A program made the position numbers and the translations under genes. A DNA stretch of 63,635 bases, the filler included, from Octopus bimaculoides (taxonomy: Eukaryota), in the NCBI RefSeq assembly GCF_001194135.2. It is 6 parts of 6 records of this genome, joined end to end, with 100 filler letters (N's around TTAATTAATTAA, not from the genome) between each part and the next. Parts side by side here need not be neighbours in the genome. Positions count along the whole stretch, not along the records: positions 17,248 to 38,363 come from NC_068988.1; 5 more parts are not named here. One strand, given 5' to 3'. Shown here piece after piece: positions 27,010 to 38,363 of the stretch. Positions within the stretch are counted from its first letter, which is position 1. Each line of letters opens with the position of its first letter. The notes under the pieces are model-generated. The model saw nothing but the letters and a program-made list of their open reading frames with translations. It was not told where the DNA came from and ran no database searches.

Positions 27010-28200
27010 GGGTCCCCCGTTCCCTTATCAGGTGGTCAATGAGGAAACTAGGGATAGATGAGTGGTTAGAGAGAACTGTGCAAGCCATGTACAGGGACGC
27101 TATCAGTAAGGTGAGGGTTGGCAACAAGTACAGCGAAGAATTCCGGTTTGAGATAGGGGACCACCAAAATCCAGTCCTCCAGGCAATAACACAGGAATTC
27201 AAGATGGGATGCCCTTGGGAGCTCCTCTTTGCTGATGACCTTGCCCTAATTGCTGAGTCACTATCAGAACTAGAGGAGAAGTTTCAGGTGTGGAAGCAAG
27301 GACTAGAATCAAAGGGCCTTAGAGTCAACCTAGCTAAAACCAAAGTCTTAATAGGTAGGAAGGTAGACAAAACACAAACCCCTTCAGGTAGATGGCCCTG
27401 CTTGATCTGTAGAAAAGGAATAGGTAGAAACTCCATAAGATGCTCCCAGTGTAAGCTATGGACACATAAGAGGTGCAGCAATATCAAAGGCAGGCTAACT
27501 AGCAAGATAGTTTTTGTATGTGGCAGATGTACAGGAGCAATAAACACTGAAAATGTGCAGAAAACAACCTTTGTCACACTCCAGGGAGAAAAACTAGAAG
27601 TAGTTGATAGCTTCCGTTACCTAGGTGACCAAGTTTGTAGCAGGAGAAGGTGCGCTGAAAGTGTAGCTGCTAGCATAAGAATAGTTTGGGCAAAGTTCAG
27701 AGAGCTCTTACCTCTGCTGATGACAAAGGGCCTCTCACTCAGAGTAAAAGGTAGGCTGTATGACGCATTTGTACAAATCGCCATGCTACATGGCAGTGAA
27801 ACATGGGCCGTGACTGTTGAGGACATGCGTAAGCTCGCAAGAAATGAAAACAGTATGCTCCGATGGATGTGTAATGTCAGTGTGCATACTCGACAGAGTG
27901 TAAGTACCTTGAGAGAAAAGTTGAACCTAAGAAGCATCAGTTGTGGTGTGCAAGAGAGACGATTGTGCTGGTATGGACATGTGGCAAGAATGGATGAGGG
28001 TAGCTGTGTGAAAAAGTTCCACACCCTAACAGTTAAGAGAACCTGTGGAAGAGGTAGACCCAGGAAGACCTGGTATGAGATGGTGAAGCACGATCTTCGA
28101 ACTTTAGGCCTCACCAAGGCAATGACTAGTGACCGGATCCTTTGGAAATATGCAATACATGAGAAGACCCGGCAAGCCAAGTGAGAGCATAATCTGTGGC
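27010..28200 (+). mobile_element. RTE-clade LINE (PHD-in-RT family), RT C-terminal half in one open frame
   Basis: ORF 26955-28184: RVPRSLIRWSMRKLG...PWELLFADDLAL...RVNLAKTK...WPCLICRKGIGRNSIRCSQCKLWTHKRC...CGRC...EVVDSFRYLGD...RLCWYGHVARM...GRGRPRKTW. Confidence 0.9.
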
Positions 28201-31711: not shown

Positions 31712-31895
31712 GGTAATTTTTCAGATTAACACCCGCACGATTTTCACTAGGGTGTTAGGGTTACGGTTTTGGGGTTAGGGTTTTAGGGTTACGGTTAGGG
31801 TTAGAGTTACGATGAGGGTTAGTGTTATGGTTACGGTTTTAGGGTCTAAGAATTACGGTTACGTAATTGTGCGGGTGTTAATCTGAAAAATTACC
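31712..31895. mobile_element. MITE with 27-bp TIRs starting GGTAA, 8-bp TSD and a TTAGGG-like interior (Merlin-like)
   Basis: TIRs GGTAATTTTTCAGATTAACACCCGCAC and GTGCGGGTGTTAATCTGAAAAATTACC. TSD caaatgtg / aaaatgtg (7 of 8 match). The interior consists of degenerate ttagggtt / ttacggtt units. Confidence 0.85.
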
Positions 31896-32477: not shown

Positions 32478-33015
32478 TTAATTAGAGCAACTTACCAAGG
32501 AATGTCATGCTGAGTCTTACATGGAAATGGAGCTATGGATAAATTTGAAGTAAAAACAGGAGTTCGGCAGGGCTGTATACTTTCTCCCTTTTTATTTCTA
32601 CTAGTTATAGATTGGATTATGAAGGAAACTACGATTGAAAGCCAAACAAGCATTCAATGGATGGATGCAGAAGCTCTAGAAGATCTCGACTTTGCAGATG
32701 ATATAGTGCTACTTTCACAAACATATAGCCAAATGCAAAATTAAATGTCAAAATTAAAAGTAATAGCTGCCAAACTGCGACAAATAAAAAGTTATGCACG
32801 TTAATGAAGTAAACAGTGAACATATTAAACTAGAAACCGGTGAACTAGAGGATGTAGCTGAGTTTAGGTATTTAGGTAGTAAGATAACGTTCTCAGGCGG
32901 CACCGACAAAGATATTAAGACGAGAATAAGTAAGGTAAGGACCGCTTTCCACCTGTTAAAAAAAGTATGGAGCGCAAGTGTAATTTCAATAAAGAACAAA
33001 ATAAGAATTTTTAAC
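32478..33015 (+). mobile_element. RTE-clade LINE, second family: RT core; probable continuation of 28215-28992
   Basis: IRATYQGMSC...DKFEVKTGVRQGCILSPFLFLLVIDWIM...LEDLDFADDIVLLS...LEDVAEFRYLGS...DIKTRISKVRTAF. Confidence 0.9.
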
Positions 33016-33199
33016 ACTAAGTTATGGGGACGTAAACACACCAGCATCAATTGTCAAGTGATGTTGGGGGAACAAACTCAGACACACAAACATATACATA
33101 CACATACATATATACATATATACAACGGGCTTATTTCAGTTTCTGTCTTCCAAATCCACTCACAAGGCTTTGGTCAGCCCGGGGCTATAGTAGAAGACA
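33015..33199 (-). mobile_element. SINE family A (partial, runs into a gap)
   Basis: ctaagttatggggacgtaaacacaccagc...ccaaatccactcacaaggctttggtcagccc. Confidence 0.8.
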
Positions 33200-33789
33200 N
33201 NNNNNNNNNNNNNNNNNNNNNNNNNNNNNNNNNNNNNNNNNNNNNNNNNNNNNNNNNNNNNNNNNNNNNNNNNNNNNNNNNNNNNNNNNNNNNNNNNNNG
33301 ACTCGCCCTTCCGGTCAGCCTCCCCAGACACTGACGTCATACCACAGAAGTCAAAAGTTGACCCTACACCATAGCAGTTTGTTATACATGGCCGTTATGA
33401 AATGTACCATATATTTTTAATATTGAAACAAATGCCAGTTTGTATAATACTTTCTATCTCTCAAGTTTAAACAAGATCCATTTCAAGTATTGCGGTAGTT
33501 AGGTATATACACAGAATTAAAACAATGGATGTACGAGTTTGCTTTAAAATTGAGCTAAAAATCTCAGCTGAGCATCCTTTAGATCATTAAAATTTGAATT
33601 AATACATTTCCTGTAAGTATTCATCCTAATTCTTACTTGATTGTATCTTATTTTCATGGCAGTTATATCTGTTCTTAGTTTCGTTAACTTTGTAATGCAT
33701 TGGACTTCGTCCCATCCACATATGCCACATAATTGTCAAAGAGGAAAACATTATTTGTGAACCATGAGTCATTTCAAGTCTCTGATTAA

Positions 33790-36415
33790 TAATCATCATC
33801 AATTTCAGTATTACTGTCCGATCCACTCTGTCAAGGAAATCACTTTCACTAAGTTCACTGTCACTATCAGGATCAGAATCTGATGCGCAAGTTTCATCTT
33901 CAAGTTCTTCTTCCAGAATATCTACTAACTGATGGGGCATCACCTCACCCCTCTGTCCACTTTGGCCTTATGATTCCAGCTTCCATTGTCCATCCATGTC
34001 CTTCATATCCTGGTCTGGAAGTTGCTTCACCAAACATGTTGCTTGCAGATATATCTACATGGAGGCAGTGAAGCAAGATCAAATTGCTTAGATTTTGTGA
34101 AATAATCCTTCCTACTGCACTTTGCTTGCAAGATTATGAACTACAATGTATTCACCTTTTTTTGTCCTTTTGTTACCATGCAGCACACATGTGAACCTCT
34201 CCAGTTCATTCATCACTTCCTCGTTGACTTCCCAAGACTCCCCTAACTTGGAGAATGCTTTCTGGAATGATTCATCTATTTCAACGACTTTCAGTCCCTT
34301 CACTTTCCCCTTCCCTTTGAAGGCACTGGTACTATTGCACCTGGTGAAGGCATGATGACTCAGCAATGCAGAACAGAGAACAAGCATGGAAGACATAGCC
34401 AGCTTGGTCACATCGATACAGTGTTGTGTGTTGCTCTTTCCAGTTTCAAACAGAATTTGAAGTCCTTCCAGGAATCTAGCATGTTGAAGTAAGATGAAAA
34501 ATATGTCTGAATCAGGACTCCTCATGCAAACGGATTTGCATCTCTGTTCTTTGGCATACATGCAATACAGGATCACATGAGTGTCAGTTTCTTCCTGTGA
34601 AGATTTGAGAGAGTGTACTGCTTGACAGAATGTGTAATGTCCATCTGATGTCAACTGGCAAGCTTTTCCTTCACATATTAGTATCATCTCATGTCCAGTG
34701 AGAATGTTGGCAGACACCTCACTCCTCCAAGTTGAGAGCAAAAGCTGAATGAACTGTGTCTTGTTCTCATCGTTTGCAAGAAAGACTTTCCAGTCTTTCA
34801 GATGCTTTGTTTTCTCACCACTCAGGATGAGTTTGTCTCCAGCACTTTGTCTGTTTGTACCCCTTTTACATAATCTTCCTTGTACATGTCAGTGCTAAAT
34901 ATGACAGGTGAAGAGTAGATCCCAACATCTTATGAGATATTTCCCCGAATGTTTGTGGAATCTCATGCAAGCAATGGAACACTGCATTTCCATCCTCTAT
35001 GATGAAGCTCTGTCTTGGATCAAGTAACTGTGCATCATCACATTCTTTCACATGTTTGAAGCCTTTCAATTTGTCTGTTTTTGCTAAAAATCCATGTCAA
35101 TCCAATGCTGGCATCAATGGGTATGTTATCAGTTTGTCAAGGTCAAGTTTCCGATCAATCTGTGCTTAAGACTCCACAAGTAAGTGAAACGCTATGTTTA
35201 CCTGCTGCTTTTACTCGACAACTTTGTTTTGAGAAGATGAGAGTTTCACAGACTTGTGCATGTATGCCATGGTTTTCAAATTTGGGTGTTTAATAGAATC
35301 AAAAAAGCCATCCTTCTTCACTAGTCTGTTTTCTATGAAGTCTTCCTTTGCTAGCCTACAAACAGTTTCAGCAGTGAGGACATCCTTTGCAACTTCTTCT
35401 GAAACCAGAGCGCCAGATAATAGATTGTACAACTTCTCATCATCTGGGATGTTGAAAGGGTTGTTGAAGCACTTGATAGCTGCAATGGTCCGTGAGACAA
35501 GTTTCTTGCTAGTTGCAATTTCACAAGGGTGAACATCCCAATATTGCAGTCTTTGTCTTCTTCATCAGACATTCCCACTAGATAAAAATGTAGCCTGAAG
35601 AAATTTGGCTCATTCTTTACCTAACTTTGTTCATCATTGATAAGCACTGTAGTTTGTCTGCAGACCACTAATGTCTGCTCCAGCCGAGCCACTTCCACCT
35701 TTTGATTTTGCTTGCTTCATAAAAGTTTTTTTGATTGTCTTGTCGACAGCACACCTATTTTCTGGAATAAAGTATCTCGCCACACTGATTGCACTTCTCT
35801 TTAGCAAATCCTCCACACTGGAATGAGAATGTTCAATGTTAGCAATAAACATCTAAAAGAATGCAAGGTACCAGGCATAGTTGTGTCCTCCAAAGCTGAA
35901 GAAAGGGTCAAGCATAAGGTAGAGGCACTGTGCGTATACTGTACAGCTTGTAGAAAGCACATTGTCAACTAAACATGGTTGATGTATGACATCCAAAGCA
36001 CAGCAGTCTTTCCATGTTGGCTGAGTGAATGTTCTCACGGAAATGGAGGTATTCTTCAATGTATGAACAAATTTTCTGATCATTCAATGCTGCATTTTCA
36101 GTCTCCTTACTGGGAGATGTTTGATAGTTTTCCAAATGGAAAACAAGCCAGCATCAATCTCTCAAGGGCTTCCATCAGAACTTTGTGGCAATTAAGTAAG
36201 CGTGCATAGTTCTTGGCTGAAATGACACCCATCAAAGACCCAGATGTTGTAAGACTGACTTCAAGTAAGATATCAGCAAATCCTGTTCCATGGGGGTACC
36301 TTCTATCCCAGTTTTTTTTTTGTGTGCTGGCAACATAAATTTTCTGACTTGTTAGACCCAGAGCTATATGAAAATCCCCATTAAAGTAAATCACAAGTGG
36401 CCTAATAACATTGCT
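33790..36415 (-). mobile_element. Academ (AcademX-type) DNA transposon remnant: transposase fused to an XPG/FEN1-like nuclease, pseudogenised and 5'-truncated
   Basis: Transposase part: GDFH...GTGFADILLE...GSLMGVISAKNYARLLNCHKVLMEALERL; PFFSFGGHNYAWYL; AVDKTIKKTFMKQAKSKGG. Then IIEDGNAVFH. XPG part: SSQEETDTHVILY...RSPDSDIFFILL...HAFTRCNSTSAFKGKGK, followed by an acidic tail. Many stops and frameshifts. Confidence 0.8.
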
Positions 36416-37072
36416 GAAAAATCAACAAGGAGCAACACACACTACACTAGCTGTTAACATGTTATCAGAACTTTCTCTTCAAAGAAATAAATTCTACTTA
36501 TTTTACATAATAATTAATAAATGTCATAATATTATGACTTTTTAATTATTGATATATTACTTAATATGTTATTTGTCTTTATAAGATGATTGTACTAAAT
36601 GATAAAAAGAAAATGAATGTAGTGCCACCCAAGAGCTAAACATGATAGGAGGTATCTGCTTTTATACATAAGTACACTTGAAAACTTATCAAAATGCAAT
36701 TAACAATTTTATCTTCTTTAGCCATCCCATCTGAATTTGTGGTAGTGTGTTAGTCTTTTCAAGTAGAAATTACATTGTGTTACTTGTACAGTTATAAAAA
36801 GTTTATTAAATGCTAAAAATCTTGGACGTTATATAATGGGCTTGCATATGCATTTATAGTCACATATATACACACACAGTTATACTTACACACATGCATA
36901 CATATACACAGTTGCATTTACACACTTACACACATGTAGTCACATTTATACAAACACACACATGCATGCACACACATACACATGCACACATACATGTACA
37001 CATATTCACTCTCACACATTTGTACAAATGGTATCAGTATTCTAATTCTGTACTTTTTCTTTTCCAGAAATT

Positions 37073-37415
37073 ATGAATAGCTATAGATATATACGGCAGT
37101 ACACTGGTGCTGTGAAAGCTGTTATACTGGACTGGTCTGGCACAACAATTGACCGTTATGTAATGGCACCAGCTGTCGCATTTGTTGATGTCTTCCAGAA
37201 ACATGGGGTCTCTGTATCAATGTCTGAGGCTCGAGTGCCAATGGGTTTACGGAAGGATGCACACATCAAAGCATTAACAGAAAATGTTGATGTCAGACAA
37301 AGATGGAAGGAAGTACATGGAAGATTCCCTGATCATTCAGATGTTGAGAAAATGTATCATGATTTTGTGCCCTTACAACTCTCAGTTCTTTCCAAGTATA
37401 GCAAGTTACTTCCAG
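37073..37415 (+). CDS. phnX: Phosphonoacetaldehyde hydrolase (phosphonatase, HAD superfamily), coding exon for aa 1-114; the rest of the gene was not found in this window
   Basis: Translation MNSYRYIRQYTGAVKAVILDWSGTTIDRYVMAPAVAFVDVFQKHGVSVSMSEARVPMGLRKDAHIKAL...RWKEVHGRFP...MYHDFVPLQLSVLSKYSKLLPG. HAD motif I is DWSGT (bacterial DWAGT). The cap motif EARxPMGLxKxxH has the Schiff-base Lys 41 residues after the nucleophile Asp, as in Bacillus cereus PhnX (D12/K53). Acceptor tactttttcttttccAG ends at 37067 and donor CCAG|GTAAGT starts at 37416 (phase 1). Confidence 0.9.
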
Positions 37416-38363
37416 GTAAGTGTGGATCAAGCTCTCATCTTTTACATTAAGTGACACCTTAGATTCTCAACTGTCACCTCCTCCAAGCTGGTATGTTAAC
37501 TCTTCTCAATTACCAAATGATGGTATTAGACAAGGTGTTAAGTCTCCCTCTCAATGACCAGGGGATTGTGTTAAGTCTGCTTCCCAGAGATCGGGTTGTA
37601 TGTTAGAACTATCAACATTTACATCATCTCACAGTGCAAGTATCTATTTTTAATGCATCTGTGACTGTAAACTTCTCATCTGAAAAGAAACCCTTTCCCT
37701 TTAGGGTTAAGAAGCCAGTGAAGAAGCGACGTCTTGTTGGTTATCCAATTGAGAGGGTATTAACAACAGGTGATGTGAAATGATTGCAACCTTTGACCTT
37801 AATCCATATTAGTTTCTGATCATTTGGCCTAATGATTTCAAAGGTAGTTATTATTAAATAATGGTAATATATTTCATCTCAGTTGATTATATTGACTTCA
37901 GTATATAGTTGAATCTCTATGGAATGTGATACAAAGTAAACTCAGCAGGATTTGAATTCAGAATATATAAAGAGGCAACTAAATACTATTATATGTTTAG
38001 ATAGTCAATCTAAGATTTCAATCATTGTGATAATAATGATTTCTATCAGTAGCACCAATTTGTAGGCAGAGTACTAATTAAATCATCCCTAGGACTTGCC
38101 TGCTCCAAATTTTGTTGACCACAGAAAACTGAAATGTTATATGGACTGTTAGATATGTAATTCGTCTGACGTTCCATGTGTCATGTGGTTCGTCTGAGTT
38201 CATTGTTTCATTGTTGTTGTCTTGTGGGACTGTCGTAGTAAAAGGTCATTGATAGATATATGGCGGACATGACTTTTGTTTATTCATAACGAACATTGGG
38301 TGAGTGCGTTCTTTGTATGTAATTGAACAATAAATGTAATAATTAAATTGTATAACTCGTTAT

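What the first reader, a model, noticed from the sequence alone, without database searches (positions are those of the whole stretch)
37068..37421. Intron-containing phosphonatase (PhnX) in an animal genome: C-P bond cleavage encoded by the host
Seen in sequence: an intact exon bounded by a canonical acceptor and GTAAGT donor encodes 114 aa with DWSGT and EARVPMGLRKDAH. The nucleophile Asp, the Schiff-base Lys (41 residues later) and the cap His are all retained. Established: PhnX cleaves the C-P bond of phosphonoacetaldehyde in the bacterial PhnW/PhnX route of 2-aminoethylphosphonate breakdown, and molluscs make abundant aminoethylphosphonate lipids. Inference: this animal can recycle phosphonate phosphorus itself, through an ancient or horizontally acquired gene that has gained introns. 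Homologues may already be annotated in invertebrate genomes, so any novelty lies in pathway and origin rather than mere presence.
Basis: partly seen in the sequence, partly recalled or inferred. Interest (0 to 1): 0.75.

Follow-up and report, generated by a model that had tools for sequence, protein, structure and literature searches.

The report
Octopus phosphonatase gene, first exon
This is the first coding exon of an octopus gene for phosphonoacetaldehyde hydrolase (PhnX, a C-P bond-cleaving enzyme); it is a real animal gene, but it is already annotated in octopus and many other molluscs, so it is largely ordinary.

Summary
Window 37068-37415 (+) is an intact exon with ATG at 37073, 114 codons plus one base, an AG acceptor at 37066-67 and a GTAAGT donor at 37416-21. 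It encodes the N-terminal 40% of a phosphonoacetaldehyde hydrolase (TIGR01422, E 3.5e-35). The nucleophile Asp (D20), Schiff-base Lys (K61) and cap His (H64) align with D12/K53/H56 of Bacillus cereus PhnX.

It is not new. The exon is 94% identical to RefSeq [quoted passage not shown]. The flanking non-coding DNA is about 90% identical and collinear with that chromosome. A spliced transcript from a related octopod uses exactly these exon boundaries, and dN/dS is 0.09-0.21.

The second and last coding exon (GSTTG, RPKP, VKVDDT) lies an estimated 1.3 kb beyond the piece's edge, so only half the gene is here.

Orthologues are annotated in at least 15 molluscs, a brachiopod and an annelid. The protein has been detected in a snail proteome. 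PhnX as a horizontally acquired gene is already published for corals and rotifers.

My added result: a gastropod and a brachiopod share two exact intron positions, so the gene is ancient in Lophotrochozoa. Its nearest relatives are marine bacterial phnW-phnX operon genes (59-66% identity). The direction and number of transfers remain unresolved.

The parts
37050..37067 (+). Polypyrimidine tract and AG acceptor of the intron that precedes the first coding exon (5'-UTR intron)
   Evidence: Sequence. The site is conserved in O. sinensis. The transcript L004 diverges from the genome exactly at window 37068.
37068..37415 (+). First coding exon of the phosphonoacetaldehyde hydrolase (PhnX) gene. It has 5 nt of 5'-UTR, ATG at 37073, 114 codons plus the first base of codon 115 (phase 1).
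   Evidence: It is 94% aa identical to O. sinensis PhnX. dN/dS is 0.21 and 0.09.
37130..37144 (+). HAD motif I, DWSGT. D20 is the phosphoryl-accepting nucleophile (B. cereus D12). The Asp+2 position is Ser, non-acidic as in PhnX.
   Evidence: Gap-free alignment to PDB PhnX chains.
37226..37264 (+). Cap-domain segment EARVPMGLRKDAH. It carries M57, the Schiff-base Lys K61 (37253-55) and H64 (37262-64), equivalent to B. cereus M49/K53/H56.
   Evidence: These columns are invariant in alignment A1.
37416..37421 (+). GTAAGT donor of the phase-1 intron between P114 and codon 115
   Evidence: The transcript junction CCAG|GAACTG in L004 and the O. sinensis exon-2 acceptor match it. L002 has the same position and phase.
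37416..38363 (+). First 948 nt of the intron, cut by the piece's edge. By collinearity with O. sinensis, exon 2 is expected about 1.3 kb beyond 38363.
   Evidence: No PhnX-like coding found here. Window 37863-38134 aligns to L003 21466-21738, and O. sinensis exon 2 starts at L003 23274.

Best explanation
The finding is coding exon 1 of the orthologue, in an octopod cephalopod, of the gene RefSeq calls phosphonoacetaldehyde hydrolase in Octopus sinensis. The gene has two coding exons.

Exon 1 (here) encodes HAD motif I, with the Asp nucleophile, and most of the helical cap domain, with the Schiff-base Lys, its His/Met neighbours and the specificity loop. Exon 2 (off the piece) encodes motif II (GSTTG), the phosphonate-binding Arg (RPKP) and the Mg2+-binding motif IV (VKVDDT).

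Inferred mechanism, taken from the B. cereus enzyme. K61 forms an iminium with the aldehyde of phosphonoacetaldehyde. This activates the C-P bond for phosphoryl transfer to D20. Hydrolysis of the enamine and the acyl-phosphate then releases acetaldehyde and phosphate.

Inferred role. Together with an aminoethylphosphonate transaminase, the enzyme would let the animal release phosphate from 2-aminoethylphosphonate, derived from its own or dietary phosphonolipids and phosphonoglycans. The start codon is preceded by an in-frame stop in a relative's transcript and there is no N-terminal extension, so the protein is probably cytosolic.

Origin. The gene has been resident in lophotrochozoan animals since before the mollusc-brachiopod split. 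It is most closely related to a clade of marine bacterial phnX genes that sit in phnW-phnX operons.

Shown: the exon, its splice sites, family assignment, catalytic residues, orthology and synteny, purifying selection, transcript splicing in a relative, and taxonomic spread. Inferred: enzymatic activity, physiological substrate and role, localisation, and the HGT scenario.
For: Exon anatomy. Family: TIGR01422 at E 3.5e-35 for the exon. The full-length O. sinensis orthologue scores 299 bits against a curated cutoff of 220 over profile positions 1-251. PDB PhnX chains match at 1e-22 for the exon and 1e-53 to 1e-60 for the full length, with D12, M49, K53, H56, T126, Y128, R160 and D186 conserved.

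Orthology: 94% aa identity to O. sinensis PhnX; collinear non-coding DNA at 90-94% nucleotide identity.

Expression and splicing in a relative: the 1329-nt Logan contig L004 (SRR3401912) carries an uninterrupted 280-aa ORF and joins the exons at exactly the window's donor. It departs from the genome at exactly the window's acceptor.

Selection: dN/dS is 0.21 and 0.09.

Animal context: LINE reverse-transcriptase fragments, microsatellites and N gaps.

Spread: named orthologues occur in 15 molluscs, Lingula and Owenia.

Ancient residence: Biomphalaria and Lingula share intron positions after HIK (phase 0) and after VVK (phase 0), plus one in the same codon.

Functional context of the bacterial sister clade: in a Rhodobiaceae contig, phnX directly follows a class-V aminotransferase (PhnW-type), with a LysR regulator and transporters nearby.

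Literature: protein-level detection in a mollusc (PMC6281880); squids and bivalves contain ceramide aminoethylphosphonate (PMC7431532).
Against: Only about 40% of the coding sequence is in the piece, so the intactness of this species' exon 2 is inferred from relatives. No transcript from this species itself was available. No animal PhnX has, to my knowledge, been assayed. B. cereus active-site Cys22 is Val here. The clade's motif IV is DDxxxG rather than GDxxxD; that is the same arrangement as PDB 3IRU, which its depositors named only 'phosphonoacetaldehyde hydrolase like'. A partner transaminase in octopus was not checked. An animal that makes AEP via phosphonoacetaldehyde would be hydrolysing its own biosynthetic intermediate, so the physiological role may not be simple phosphorus scavenging.
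Confidence: 0.85

Rival explanations
1. Bacterial contamination or a recent, unspliced bacterial insertion misassembled into an animal scaffold.
For: The nearest non-animal relatives are marine bacterial PhnX at 59-68% identity.
Against: The ORF is interrupted after codon 114 by a GTAAGT intron and preceded by an AG acceptor. The flanks are animal repeats. The whole neighbourhood is collinear with an O. sinensis chromosome at about 90% identity. No bacterial sequence exceeds 68% identity, whereas the octopus orthologue is 94% identical.
Confidence: 0.01
2. Orphan pseudo-exon: a decaying remnant with no functional gene in this species.
For: Exon 2 is not in the piece. No transcript from this species was seen, and its exact product is not on record.
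Against: The frame is intact, all catalytic residues are kept, both splice signals are conserved, and dN/dS is 0.09-0.21 against two other octopods. Exon 2 is expected about 1.3 kb past the edge by collinearity, so its absence is explained by truncation of the piece.
Confidence: 0.04
3. A PhnX-fold enzyme whose main job in the animal is not phosphorus recycling. It could control the level of phosphonoacetaldehyde, the last intermediate of the animal's own AEP biosynthesis. Or it could act on another beta-carbonyl phosphonate or phosphate ester.
For: Molluscs synthesise AEP lipids (PMC7431532; PMC10574752, introduction), and phosphonoacetaldehyde is the shared intermediate of synthesis and breakdown (established pathway knowledge). 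There are active-site differences from B. cereus: C22V, Ser at Asp+2, and a DD-type motif IV. The review PMC10574752 states that phosphonates remain cryptic in eukaryotes.
Against: The Schiff-base Lys, His, Met, Arg and Mg ligands that define phosphonoacetaldehyde chemistry are all kept. The same sequence subtype in bacteria sits in phnW-phnX catabolic operons. The full-length score exceeds the equivalog cutoff.
Confidence: 0.1

Closest known systems
RefSeq 'phosphonoacetaldehyde hydrolase isoform X1 [Octopus sinensis]' (P0240, chromosome CM016866.1)
   Same: It is the orthologue. Identity is 94% over the 114 residues. The acceptor, the donor and the intron phase are the same, and the flanking DNA is collinear.
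   Different: It is a different octopod species (dS 0.13). The window has a 2.6-kb insertion upstream (33933-36561). The 'MV' N-terminal extension of isoform X1 appears to come from a SINE-like exon that is absent from the window.
Bacillus cereus phosphonoacetaldehyde hydrolase PhnX (PDB 1FEZ, 1RQL, 2IOF)
   Same: It has the HAD fold with the same order of motifs. Nucleophile Asp, Schiff-base Lys, His and Met are conserved in exon 1. In the orthologue's exon 2, Thr126, Tyr128, Arg160 and Asp186 are conserved.
   Different: Identity is only about 40%. Cys22 is Val, Ala14 is Ser, motif IV is DDxxxG instead of GDxxxD, and there is one extra residue before the Arg. The octopus gene is also a spliced nuclear gene of an animal.
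Marine bacterial PhnX clade (Kiloniellales, Rhodobiaceae, Arenicellales, SUP05, SAR324 and others) and PDB 3IRU (Oleispira antarctica 'phosphonoacetaldehyde hydrolase like protein')
   Same: It is the same sequence subtype: DWSGTT, MGLRKDLHIKA, GARPxPFM, VKVDDT and a C-terminal GE(K/T)P. Identity to the animal proteins is 59-68%. It is the best PDB hit.
   Different: These are intronless genes in phnW-phnX operons with regulators and transporters. They form their own clade, excluding the main animal clade (BS 98 with 7 named sequences and 53 with 87; main animal clade BS 67-78).
PhnX reported as horizontally acquired in corals and bdelloid rotifers
   Same: These are animal nuclear genomes carrying PhnX, with PhnW also present in corals and rotifers, interpreted as host-encoded AEP breakdown (PMC4878875; bioRxiv 10.64898/2026.05.06.723128; PMC3499245).
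   Different: According to the preprint's tree legend, the coral clade groups with Symbiodiniaceae and is separate from 'other Metazoa'. The lophotrochozoan clade found here would belong to those others. I did not have cnidarian or rotifer sequences to test this.

Membership tests
Phosphonoacetaldehyde hydrolase, PhnX (NCBIfam TIGR01422, EC 3.11.1.1) | Whole-protein score above the curated equivalog cutoff (220 bits) | tested here: inconclusive
   The window's exon alone scores 121.5 bits, because it covers only profile positions 1-102 of 251. The full-length O. sinensis orthologue (94% identical in exon 1) scores 299 bits and the related octopod transcript product 296 bits. The criterion is met for the orthologue but cannot be completed for this species, because exon 2 is off the piece.
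Phosphonoacetaldehyde hydrolase, PhnX (NCBIfam TIGR01422, EC 3.11.1.1) | HAD motif I with an Asp nucleophile and a non-acidic residue at Asp+2 (DxAGT type) | tested here: met
   DWSGT at residues 20-24. D20 aligns with B. cereus D12, and Ser replaces Ala14.
Phosphonoacetaldehyde hydrolase, PhnX (NCBIfam TIGR01422, EC 3.11.1.1) | Cap-domain Schiff-base Lys with neighbouring His and Met (B. cereus K53, H56, M49) | tested here: met
   K61, H64 and M57 align without gaps. They are invariant in alignment A1.
Phosphonoacetaldehyde hydrolase, PhnX (NCBIfam TIGR01422, EC 3.11.1.1) | Motif II Thr, phosphonate-binding Arg160 and Mg2+-binding acidic motif IV | tested here: inconclusive
   These are not in the window, because they lie in exon 2. 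They are present in the O. sinensis orthologue and in the octopod transcript product as GSTTGY/F, CRPKP and VKVDDT. Motif IV is the DD variant.
Phosphonoacetaldehyde hydrolase, PhnX (NCBIfam TIGR01422, EC 3.11.1.1) | Catalytic activity on phosphonoacetaldehyde | not testable with these tools
   This needs a recombinant enzyme assay. I found no report of an assayed animal PhnX in the searched papers.
PhnX-like hydrolase TIGR03351 and other HAD-IA phosphatases (phosphoglycolate phosphatase, HxpB, 6-phosphogluconate phosphatase) | Better match to these models than to PhnX | tested here: not met
   For the exon: TIGR03351 E 0.12 (12 bits), others E 0.003 or worse, against 121.5 bits for PhnX. For the full-length orthologue: 73 bits against 299 bits.
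Bona fide animal nuclear gene (as opposed to contaminant) | Spliceosomal introns, a host repeat context and synteny with a related animal chromosome | tested here: met

The most novel reading that the evidence does not exclude
Lophotrochozoan animals have carried a working bacterial-type phosphonatase since before molluscs and brachiopods diverged, as shown by shared introns. They use it to cleave C-P bonds of their own or dietary aminoethylphosphonate, so animals and not only microbes would mineralise marine phosphonates. The closest bacterial clade is unusually shallow (mean 75% identity) although it spans many phyla. The transfer that links the two clades could therefore even have gone from a eukaryote to bacteria. 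That last point is the least likely part of the reading.
Probability: 0.3. Interest if true: 0.45.

Novelty: already known. Interest (0 to 1): 0.17.

Why it matters
If the enzyme is active, octopuses and other lophotrochozoans can release phosphate from phosphonates themselves. That bears on how phosphonolipid-rich animals turn over these lipids, and on who contributes to the marine phosphorus redox cycle. The gene's presence, name and likely foreign ancestry are already in public annotation and in the literature for other animals. The window therefore adds no new kind of element. What remains open is biochemical proof in any animal, the partner enzymes, and the direction and number of transfers. 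None of these is specific to this window.

Tried and rejected
1. I searched for further PhnX exons in the piece with tblastn, using six full-length relatives and later the L001 protein. None was found.

2. An exact look-up of the window's read-through ORF in the assembly index found nothing on record, so the species could not be named directly.

3. The first word-indexed protein search with the 115-aa exon returned only short fragments and missed the 94% identical octopus protein. Profile searches with full-length relatives were needed.

4. I tried to locate the 5'-UTR exon in the window using the 37-nt 5' end of transcript L004. Only chance-level short matches came back.

5. I looked for the coding 'MV' exon of O. 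sinensis isoform X1. The only candidate is ATGGTTG|GTAAGC inside a SINE-like repeat at L003 16023, and it has no counterpart in the window. I judged it an annotation peculiarity rather than part of this gene here.

6. My initial idea was that all introns are lineage-specific gains, based on L001, Owenia, the octopods and intronless Pecten, Patella and Liolophura. I revised it after Biomphalaria proved to share intron positions with Lingula.

7. I tried to name the 52 unnamed sequences inside the animal clade through cluster look-ups. No organism names were available. They are probably eukaryotic transcripts, but this is unproven.

8. Rfam, tRNA and repeat scans of the piece found nothing related to the finding.

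9. One literature search with loose term logic returned only irrelevant papers.

Full report
OBSERVATION. Window 37068-37415 on the + strand is an intact exon.
- A pyrimidine tract and AG (37066-67) precede AAATT and then ATG at 37073.
- The frame stays open for 114 codons to CCA (P114). It is followed by one G (37415) and GTAAGT (37416-21), which makes a phase-1 donor.
- DWSGT lies at 37130-44 and EARVPMGLRKDAH at 37226-64.

FAMILY ASSIGNMENT OF THE EXON.
- The peptide hits NCBIfam TIGR01422 (phosphonoacetaldehyde hydrolase) with E 3.5e-35 over profile positions 1-102 of 251. All other HAD families score E 0.003 or worse.
- It hits the solved PhnX structures with E about 1e-22 in gap-free alignments. 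These place D20, M57, K61 and H64 on B. cereus D12, M49, K53 and H56.

WHAT IS AND IS NOT IN THE PIECE.
- tblastn with full-length relatives finds no other PhnX-coding segment anywhere in 17248-38363.
- The rest of the piece looks like animal DNA. It holds several copies of a non-LTR retrotransposon (RVT_1 plus a PHD-like finger), microsatellites, interstitial TTAGGG-like repeats and assembly gaps.
- It has no tRNA genes and no Rfam matches.

WHOSE GENE IT IS. Profile searches with full-length relatives returned RefSeq 'phosphonoacetaldehyde hydrolase isoform X1 [Octopus sinensis]' (P0240, 284 aa).
- The window's exon is 94% identical to it (107 of 114 residues).
- The O. sinensis locus (L003, chromosome CM016866.1) is collinear with the window. 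Window 36561-37794 aligns to L003 19305-20526 at 90% nucleotide identity, and window 37863-38134 aligns to L003 21466-21738 at 94%.
- The source is therefore an octopod other than O. sinensis (dS 0.13). I could not name the species.
- In O. sinensis the gene's second and last coding exon starts at L003 23274. By collinearity, the window's exon 2 should lie about 1.3 kb beyond the piece's end. Its absence is a truncation, not a defect.

SPLICING AND SELECTION.
- A 1329-nt Logan contig from run SRR3401912 (L004) carries an uninterrupted 280-aa ORF (P0288). It is 90% identical to the O. sinensis protein.
- The contig aligns to the window at 89.8% from 37065 to 37416 and stops there.
- The junction reads CCAG|GAACTG. 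This is exactly the window's donor joined to the O. sinensis exon-2 acceptor.
- At the 5' end the contig departs from the genomic sequence at the predicted acceptor. It has an in-frame TAA nine nucleotides upstream of the ATG, read from the printed sequence.
- MNxYRY is therefore the true N-terminus, and there is no targeting extension.
- Nei-Gojobori dN/dS for exon 1 is 0.21 against O. sinensis and 0.09 against the transcript. That indicates purifying selection.

FAMILY MEMBERSHIP OF THE FULL-LENGTH PROTEIN.
- The full-length orthologue passes the TIGR01422 equivalog cutoff: 299 bits against 220, over the full profile.
- It aligns to B. cereus PhnX across its length with T126, Y128, R160 and D186 conserved.
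- Differences from B. cereus are C22V, Ser at Asp+2 and a DDxxxG motif IV. The last is the arrangement of PDB 3IRU, the best structural hit.

HOW IT LIKELY WORKS (inference from the characterised bacterial enzyme).
- K61 forms a Schiff base with phosphonoacetaldehyde.
- D20 accepts the phosphoryl group as the C-P bond breaks.
- Hydrolysis then releases acetaldehyde and phosphate.
- In the closest bacterial clade the gene directly follows a class-V aminotransferase of PhnW type, with a LysR regulator and transporters nearby (L005). This supports the catabolic assignment of this sequence subtype.
- Squids and bivalves contain ceramide aminoethylphosphonate (PMC7431532), so a substrate source exists.
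- Whether the octopus enzyme serves phosphorus recovery, lipid turnover, or control of its own biosynthetic intermediate cannot be decided here.

SPREAD AMONG ANIMALS.
- Named orthologues occur in Octopus, Sinanodonta, Liolophura, Mercenaria, Mactra, Bradybaena, Patella, Biomphalaria, Haliotis, Dreissena, Argopecten, Pecten, Pinctada, Plakobranchus and Lymnaea.
- They also occur in the brachiopod Lingula and the annelid Owenia.

PHYLOGENY. I built neighbour-joining trees with Kimura distances on 280 columns.
- The 19 main named animal and eukaryote sequences form a clade with bootstrap 67-78. No named or genome-derived bacterial sequence falls inside it (0 of 87).
- The marine bacterial sequences form their own clade. 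Support is 98% with the 7 named bacterial sequences and 53% with 87.
- Animals plus marine bacteria separate from other PhnX at 82-85%.
- A small chiton-plus-L001 group is unresolved.
- The cephalopod-type group (Octopus, the transcript, L002, P0251) has 99% support.
- The bacterial clade spans Kiloniellales, Arenicellales, SUP05, SAR324, Planctomycetota, Verrucomicrobiota, Acidimicrobiia and Chloroflexota. It is nevertheless shallow, with mean identity 75%. Non-cephalopod animals are 72% identical among themselves and 66% identical to the bacteria.
- The direction of transfer is therefore not resolved.

INTRONS.

| Lineage | Intron positions in the coding sequence |
|---|---|
| Window, O. sinensis, L002 | one intron, after LLP, phase 1 |
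| L001 | one intron, after LTE, phase 0 |
| Owenia | one intron, after HK, phase 0 |
| Pecten, Patella, Liolophura | none |
| Biomphalaria | three introns |
| Lingula | five introns |

- Biomphalaria and Lingula share two positions exactly: after HIK (phase 0) and after VVK (phase 0). They also share a third in the same codon.
- With about 840 possible positions, two exact coincidences are expected by chance at roughly 1e-4 (my estimate).
- The gene, already carrying introns, therefore predates the mollusc-brachiopod split.
- Cephalopods lost those introns. The HIK|A site is uninterrupted inside the window's exon. They carry a different intron instead.

COMPARISON WITH WHAT IS KNOWN.
- The gene is annotated under this name in RefSeq for octopus and many molluscs.
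- The protein was detected in Biomphalaria hemocytes (XP_013069854.1; PMC6281880).
- PhnX appears in HGT lists for corals (PMC4878875).
- A 2026 preprint finds PhnX and PhnW in almost all of the coral genomes it examined. Its PhnX tree includes 'other Metazoa' (10.64898/2026.05.06.723128).
- Bdelloid rotifers express foreign PhnX and AEP transaminase (PMC3499245).
- A 2023 review notes that phosphonates remain cryptic in eukaryotes (PMC10574752).
- I found no biochemical characterisation of an animal PhnX in the searched literature.

VERDICT.
It is overstated as a novelty, and it remains inferential about physiology and origin.
- Novelty: already known. Interest is low.
- The modest added value here is threefold: evidence of ancient residence from shared introns; the characterisation of a shallow, phylum-spanning marine bacterial sister clade; and the demonstration that the piece holds only exon 1.

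Noticed in passing
window 33933-36561: This is a 2.6-kb segment absent from the collinear O. sinensis locus; the breakpoint maps to L003 19305 on both sides. It contains ORFs on the minus strand (34112-34741, 209 aa; 33626-33943; 36107-36394) with no Pfam hit, and no clear terminal repeats. It is probably a species-specific transposon insertion about 0.5 kb upstream of the PhnX exon.
   Followed up: partly
window 17196-19226, 24677-26411, 26955-28184: There are several diverged copies, in both orientations, of one non-LTR retrotransposon (the C-terminal part of RVT_1 followed by a PHD-like zinc finger). They are interrupted by N gaps, and related copies occur in the O. sinensis locus.
   Followed up: partly
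window 22935-22960 and 31751-31838: Short interstitial telomere-like repeats (TAGGGT/GTTAGG units) lie next to assembly gaps.
   Followed up: no
window 36872-37019: An imperfect (AC)n/(ACAT)n microsatellite ends about 50 nt before the exon's acceptor. It creates spurious His/Thr-rich ORFs (for example 36894-37076).
   Followed up: no
window 21467-22136 and 33015-33199: A SINE-like repeat of about 180-400 nt is present in at least six copies in the 34-kb O. sinensis locus (L003), at 72-87% identity.
   Followed up: no
L003 16023 (O. sinensis): The two extra N-terminal residues ('MV') of RefSeq isoform X1 appear to derive from ATGGTTG|GTAAGC inside a tRNA-SINE-like repeat. There is no counterpart in the window, and the related transcript has an in-frame stop upstream of the MNxYRY start. 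This is likely an annotation or alternative-exon peculiarity.
   Followed up: partly
L006 (Lingula anatina) and L011 (Biomphalaria glabrata): The PhnX genes of a brachiopod and a gastropod share two exact intron positions (after HIK, phase 0; after VVK, phase 0) and a third in the same codon. Pecten, Patella and Liolophura have intronless coding sequences, and cephalopods have a single, different intron.
   Followed up: yes
L012-L091 (bacterial genome loci) and L005: The bacterial PhnX subtype closest to the animal genes occurs in MAGs of many phyla: Proteobacteria, SAR324, Planctomycetota, Verrucomicrobiota, Acidimicrobiia, Chloroflexota and Deinococcales. Mean identity among them is still 75%, which suggests recent spread among marine bacteria. 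In L005 the gene sits directly after a PhnW-type aminotransferase.
   Followed up: partly
L001 (ENA ERZ25072999) and L002 (ENA ERZ21867824): These are two unnamed eukaryotic contigs from ENA assemblies that carry complete two-exon PhnX genes. L002 groups with octopods and shares their intron, so it is probably another cephalopod. L001 groups weakly with the chiton Liolophura but has an intron that the chiton lacks.
   Followed up: partly
P0066, P0075 (metagenome proteins): These PhnX homologues are 307-344 aa long, with low-complexity Asn/Ser-rich N-terminal extensions, and look protist-like. They fall outside the animal-plus-marine-bacteria group in the NJ tree. Their organisms are unknown.
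   Followed up: no
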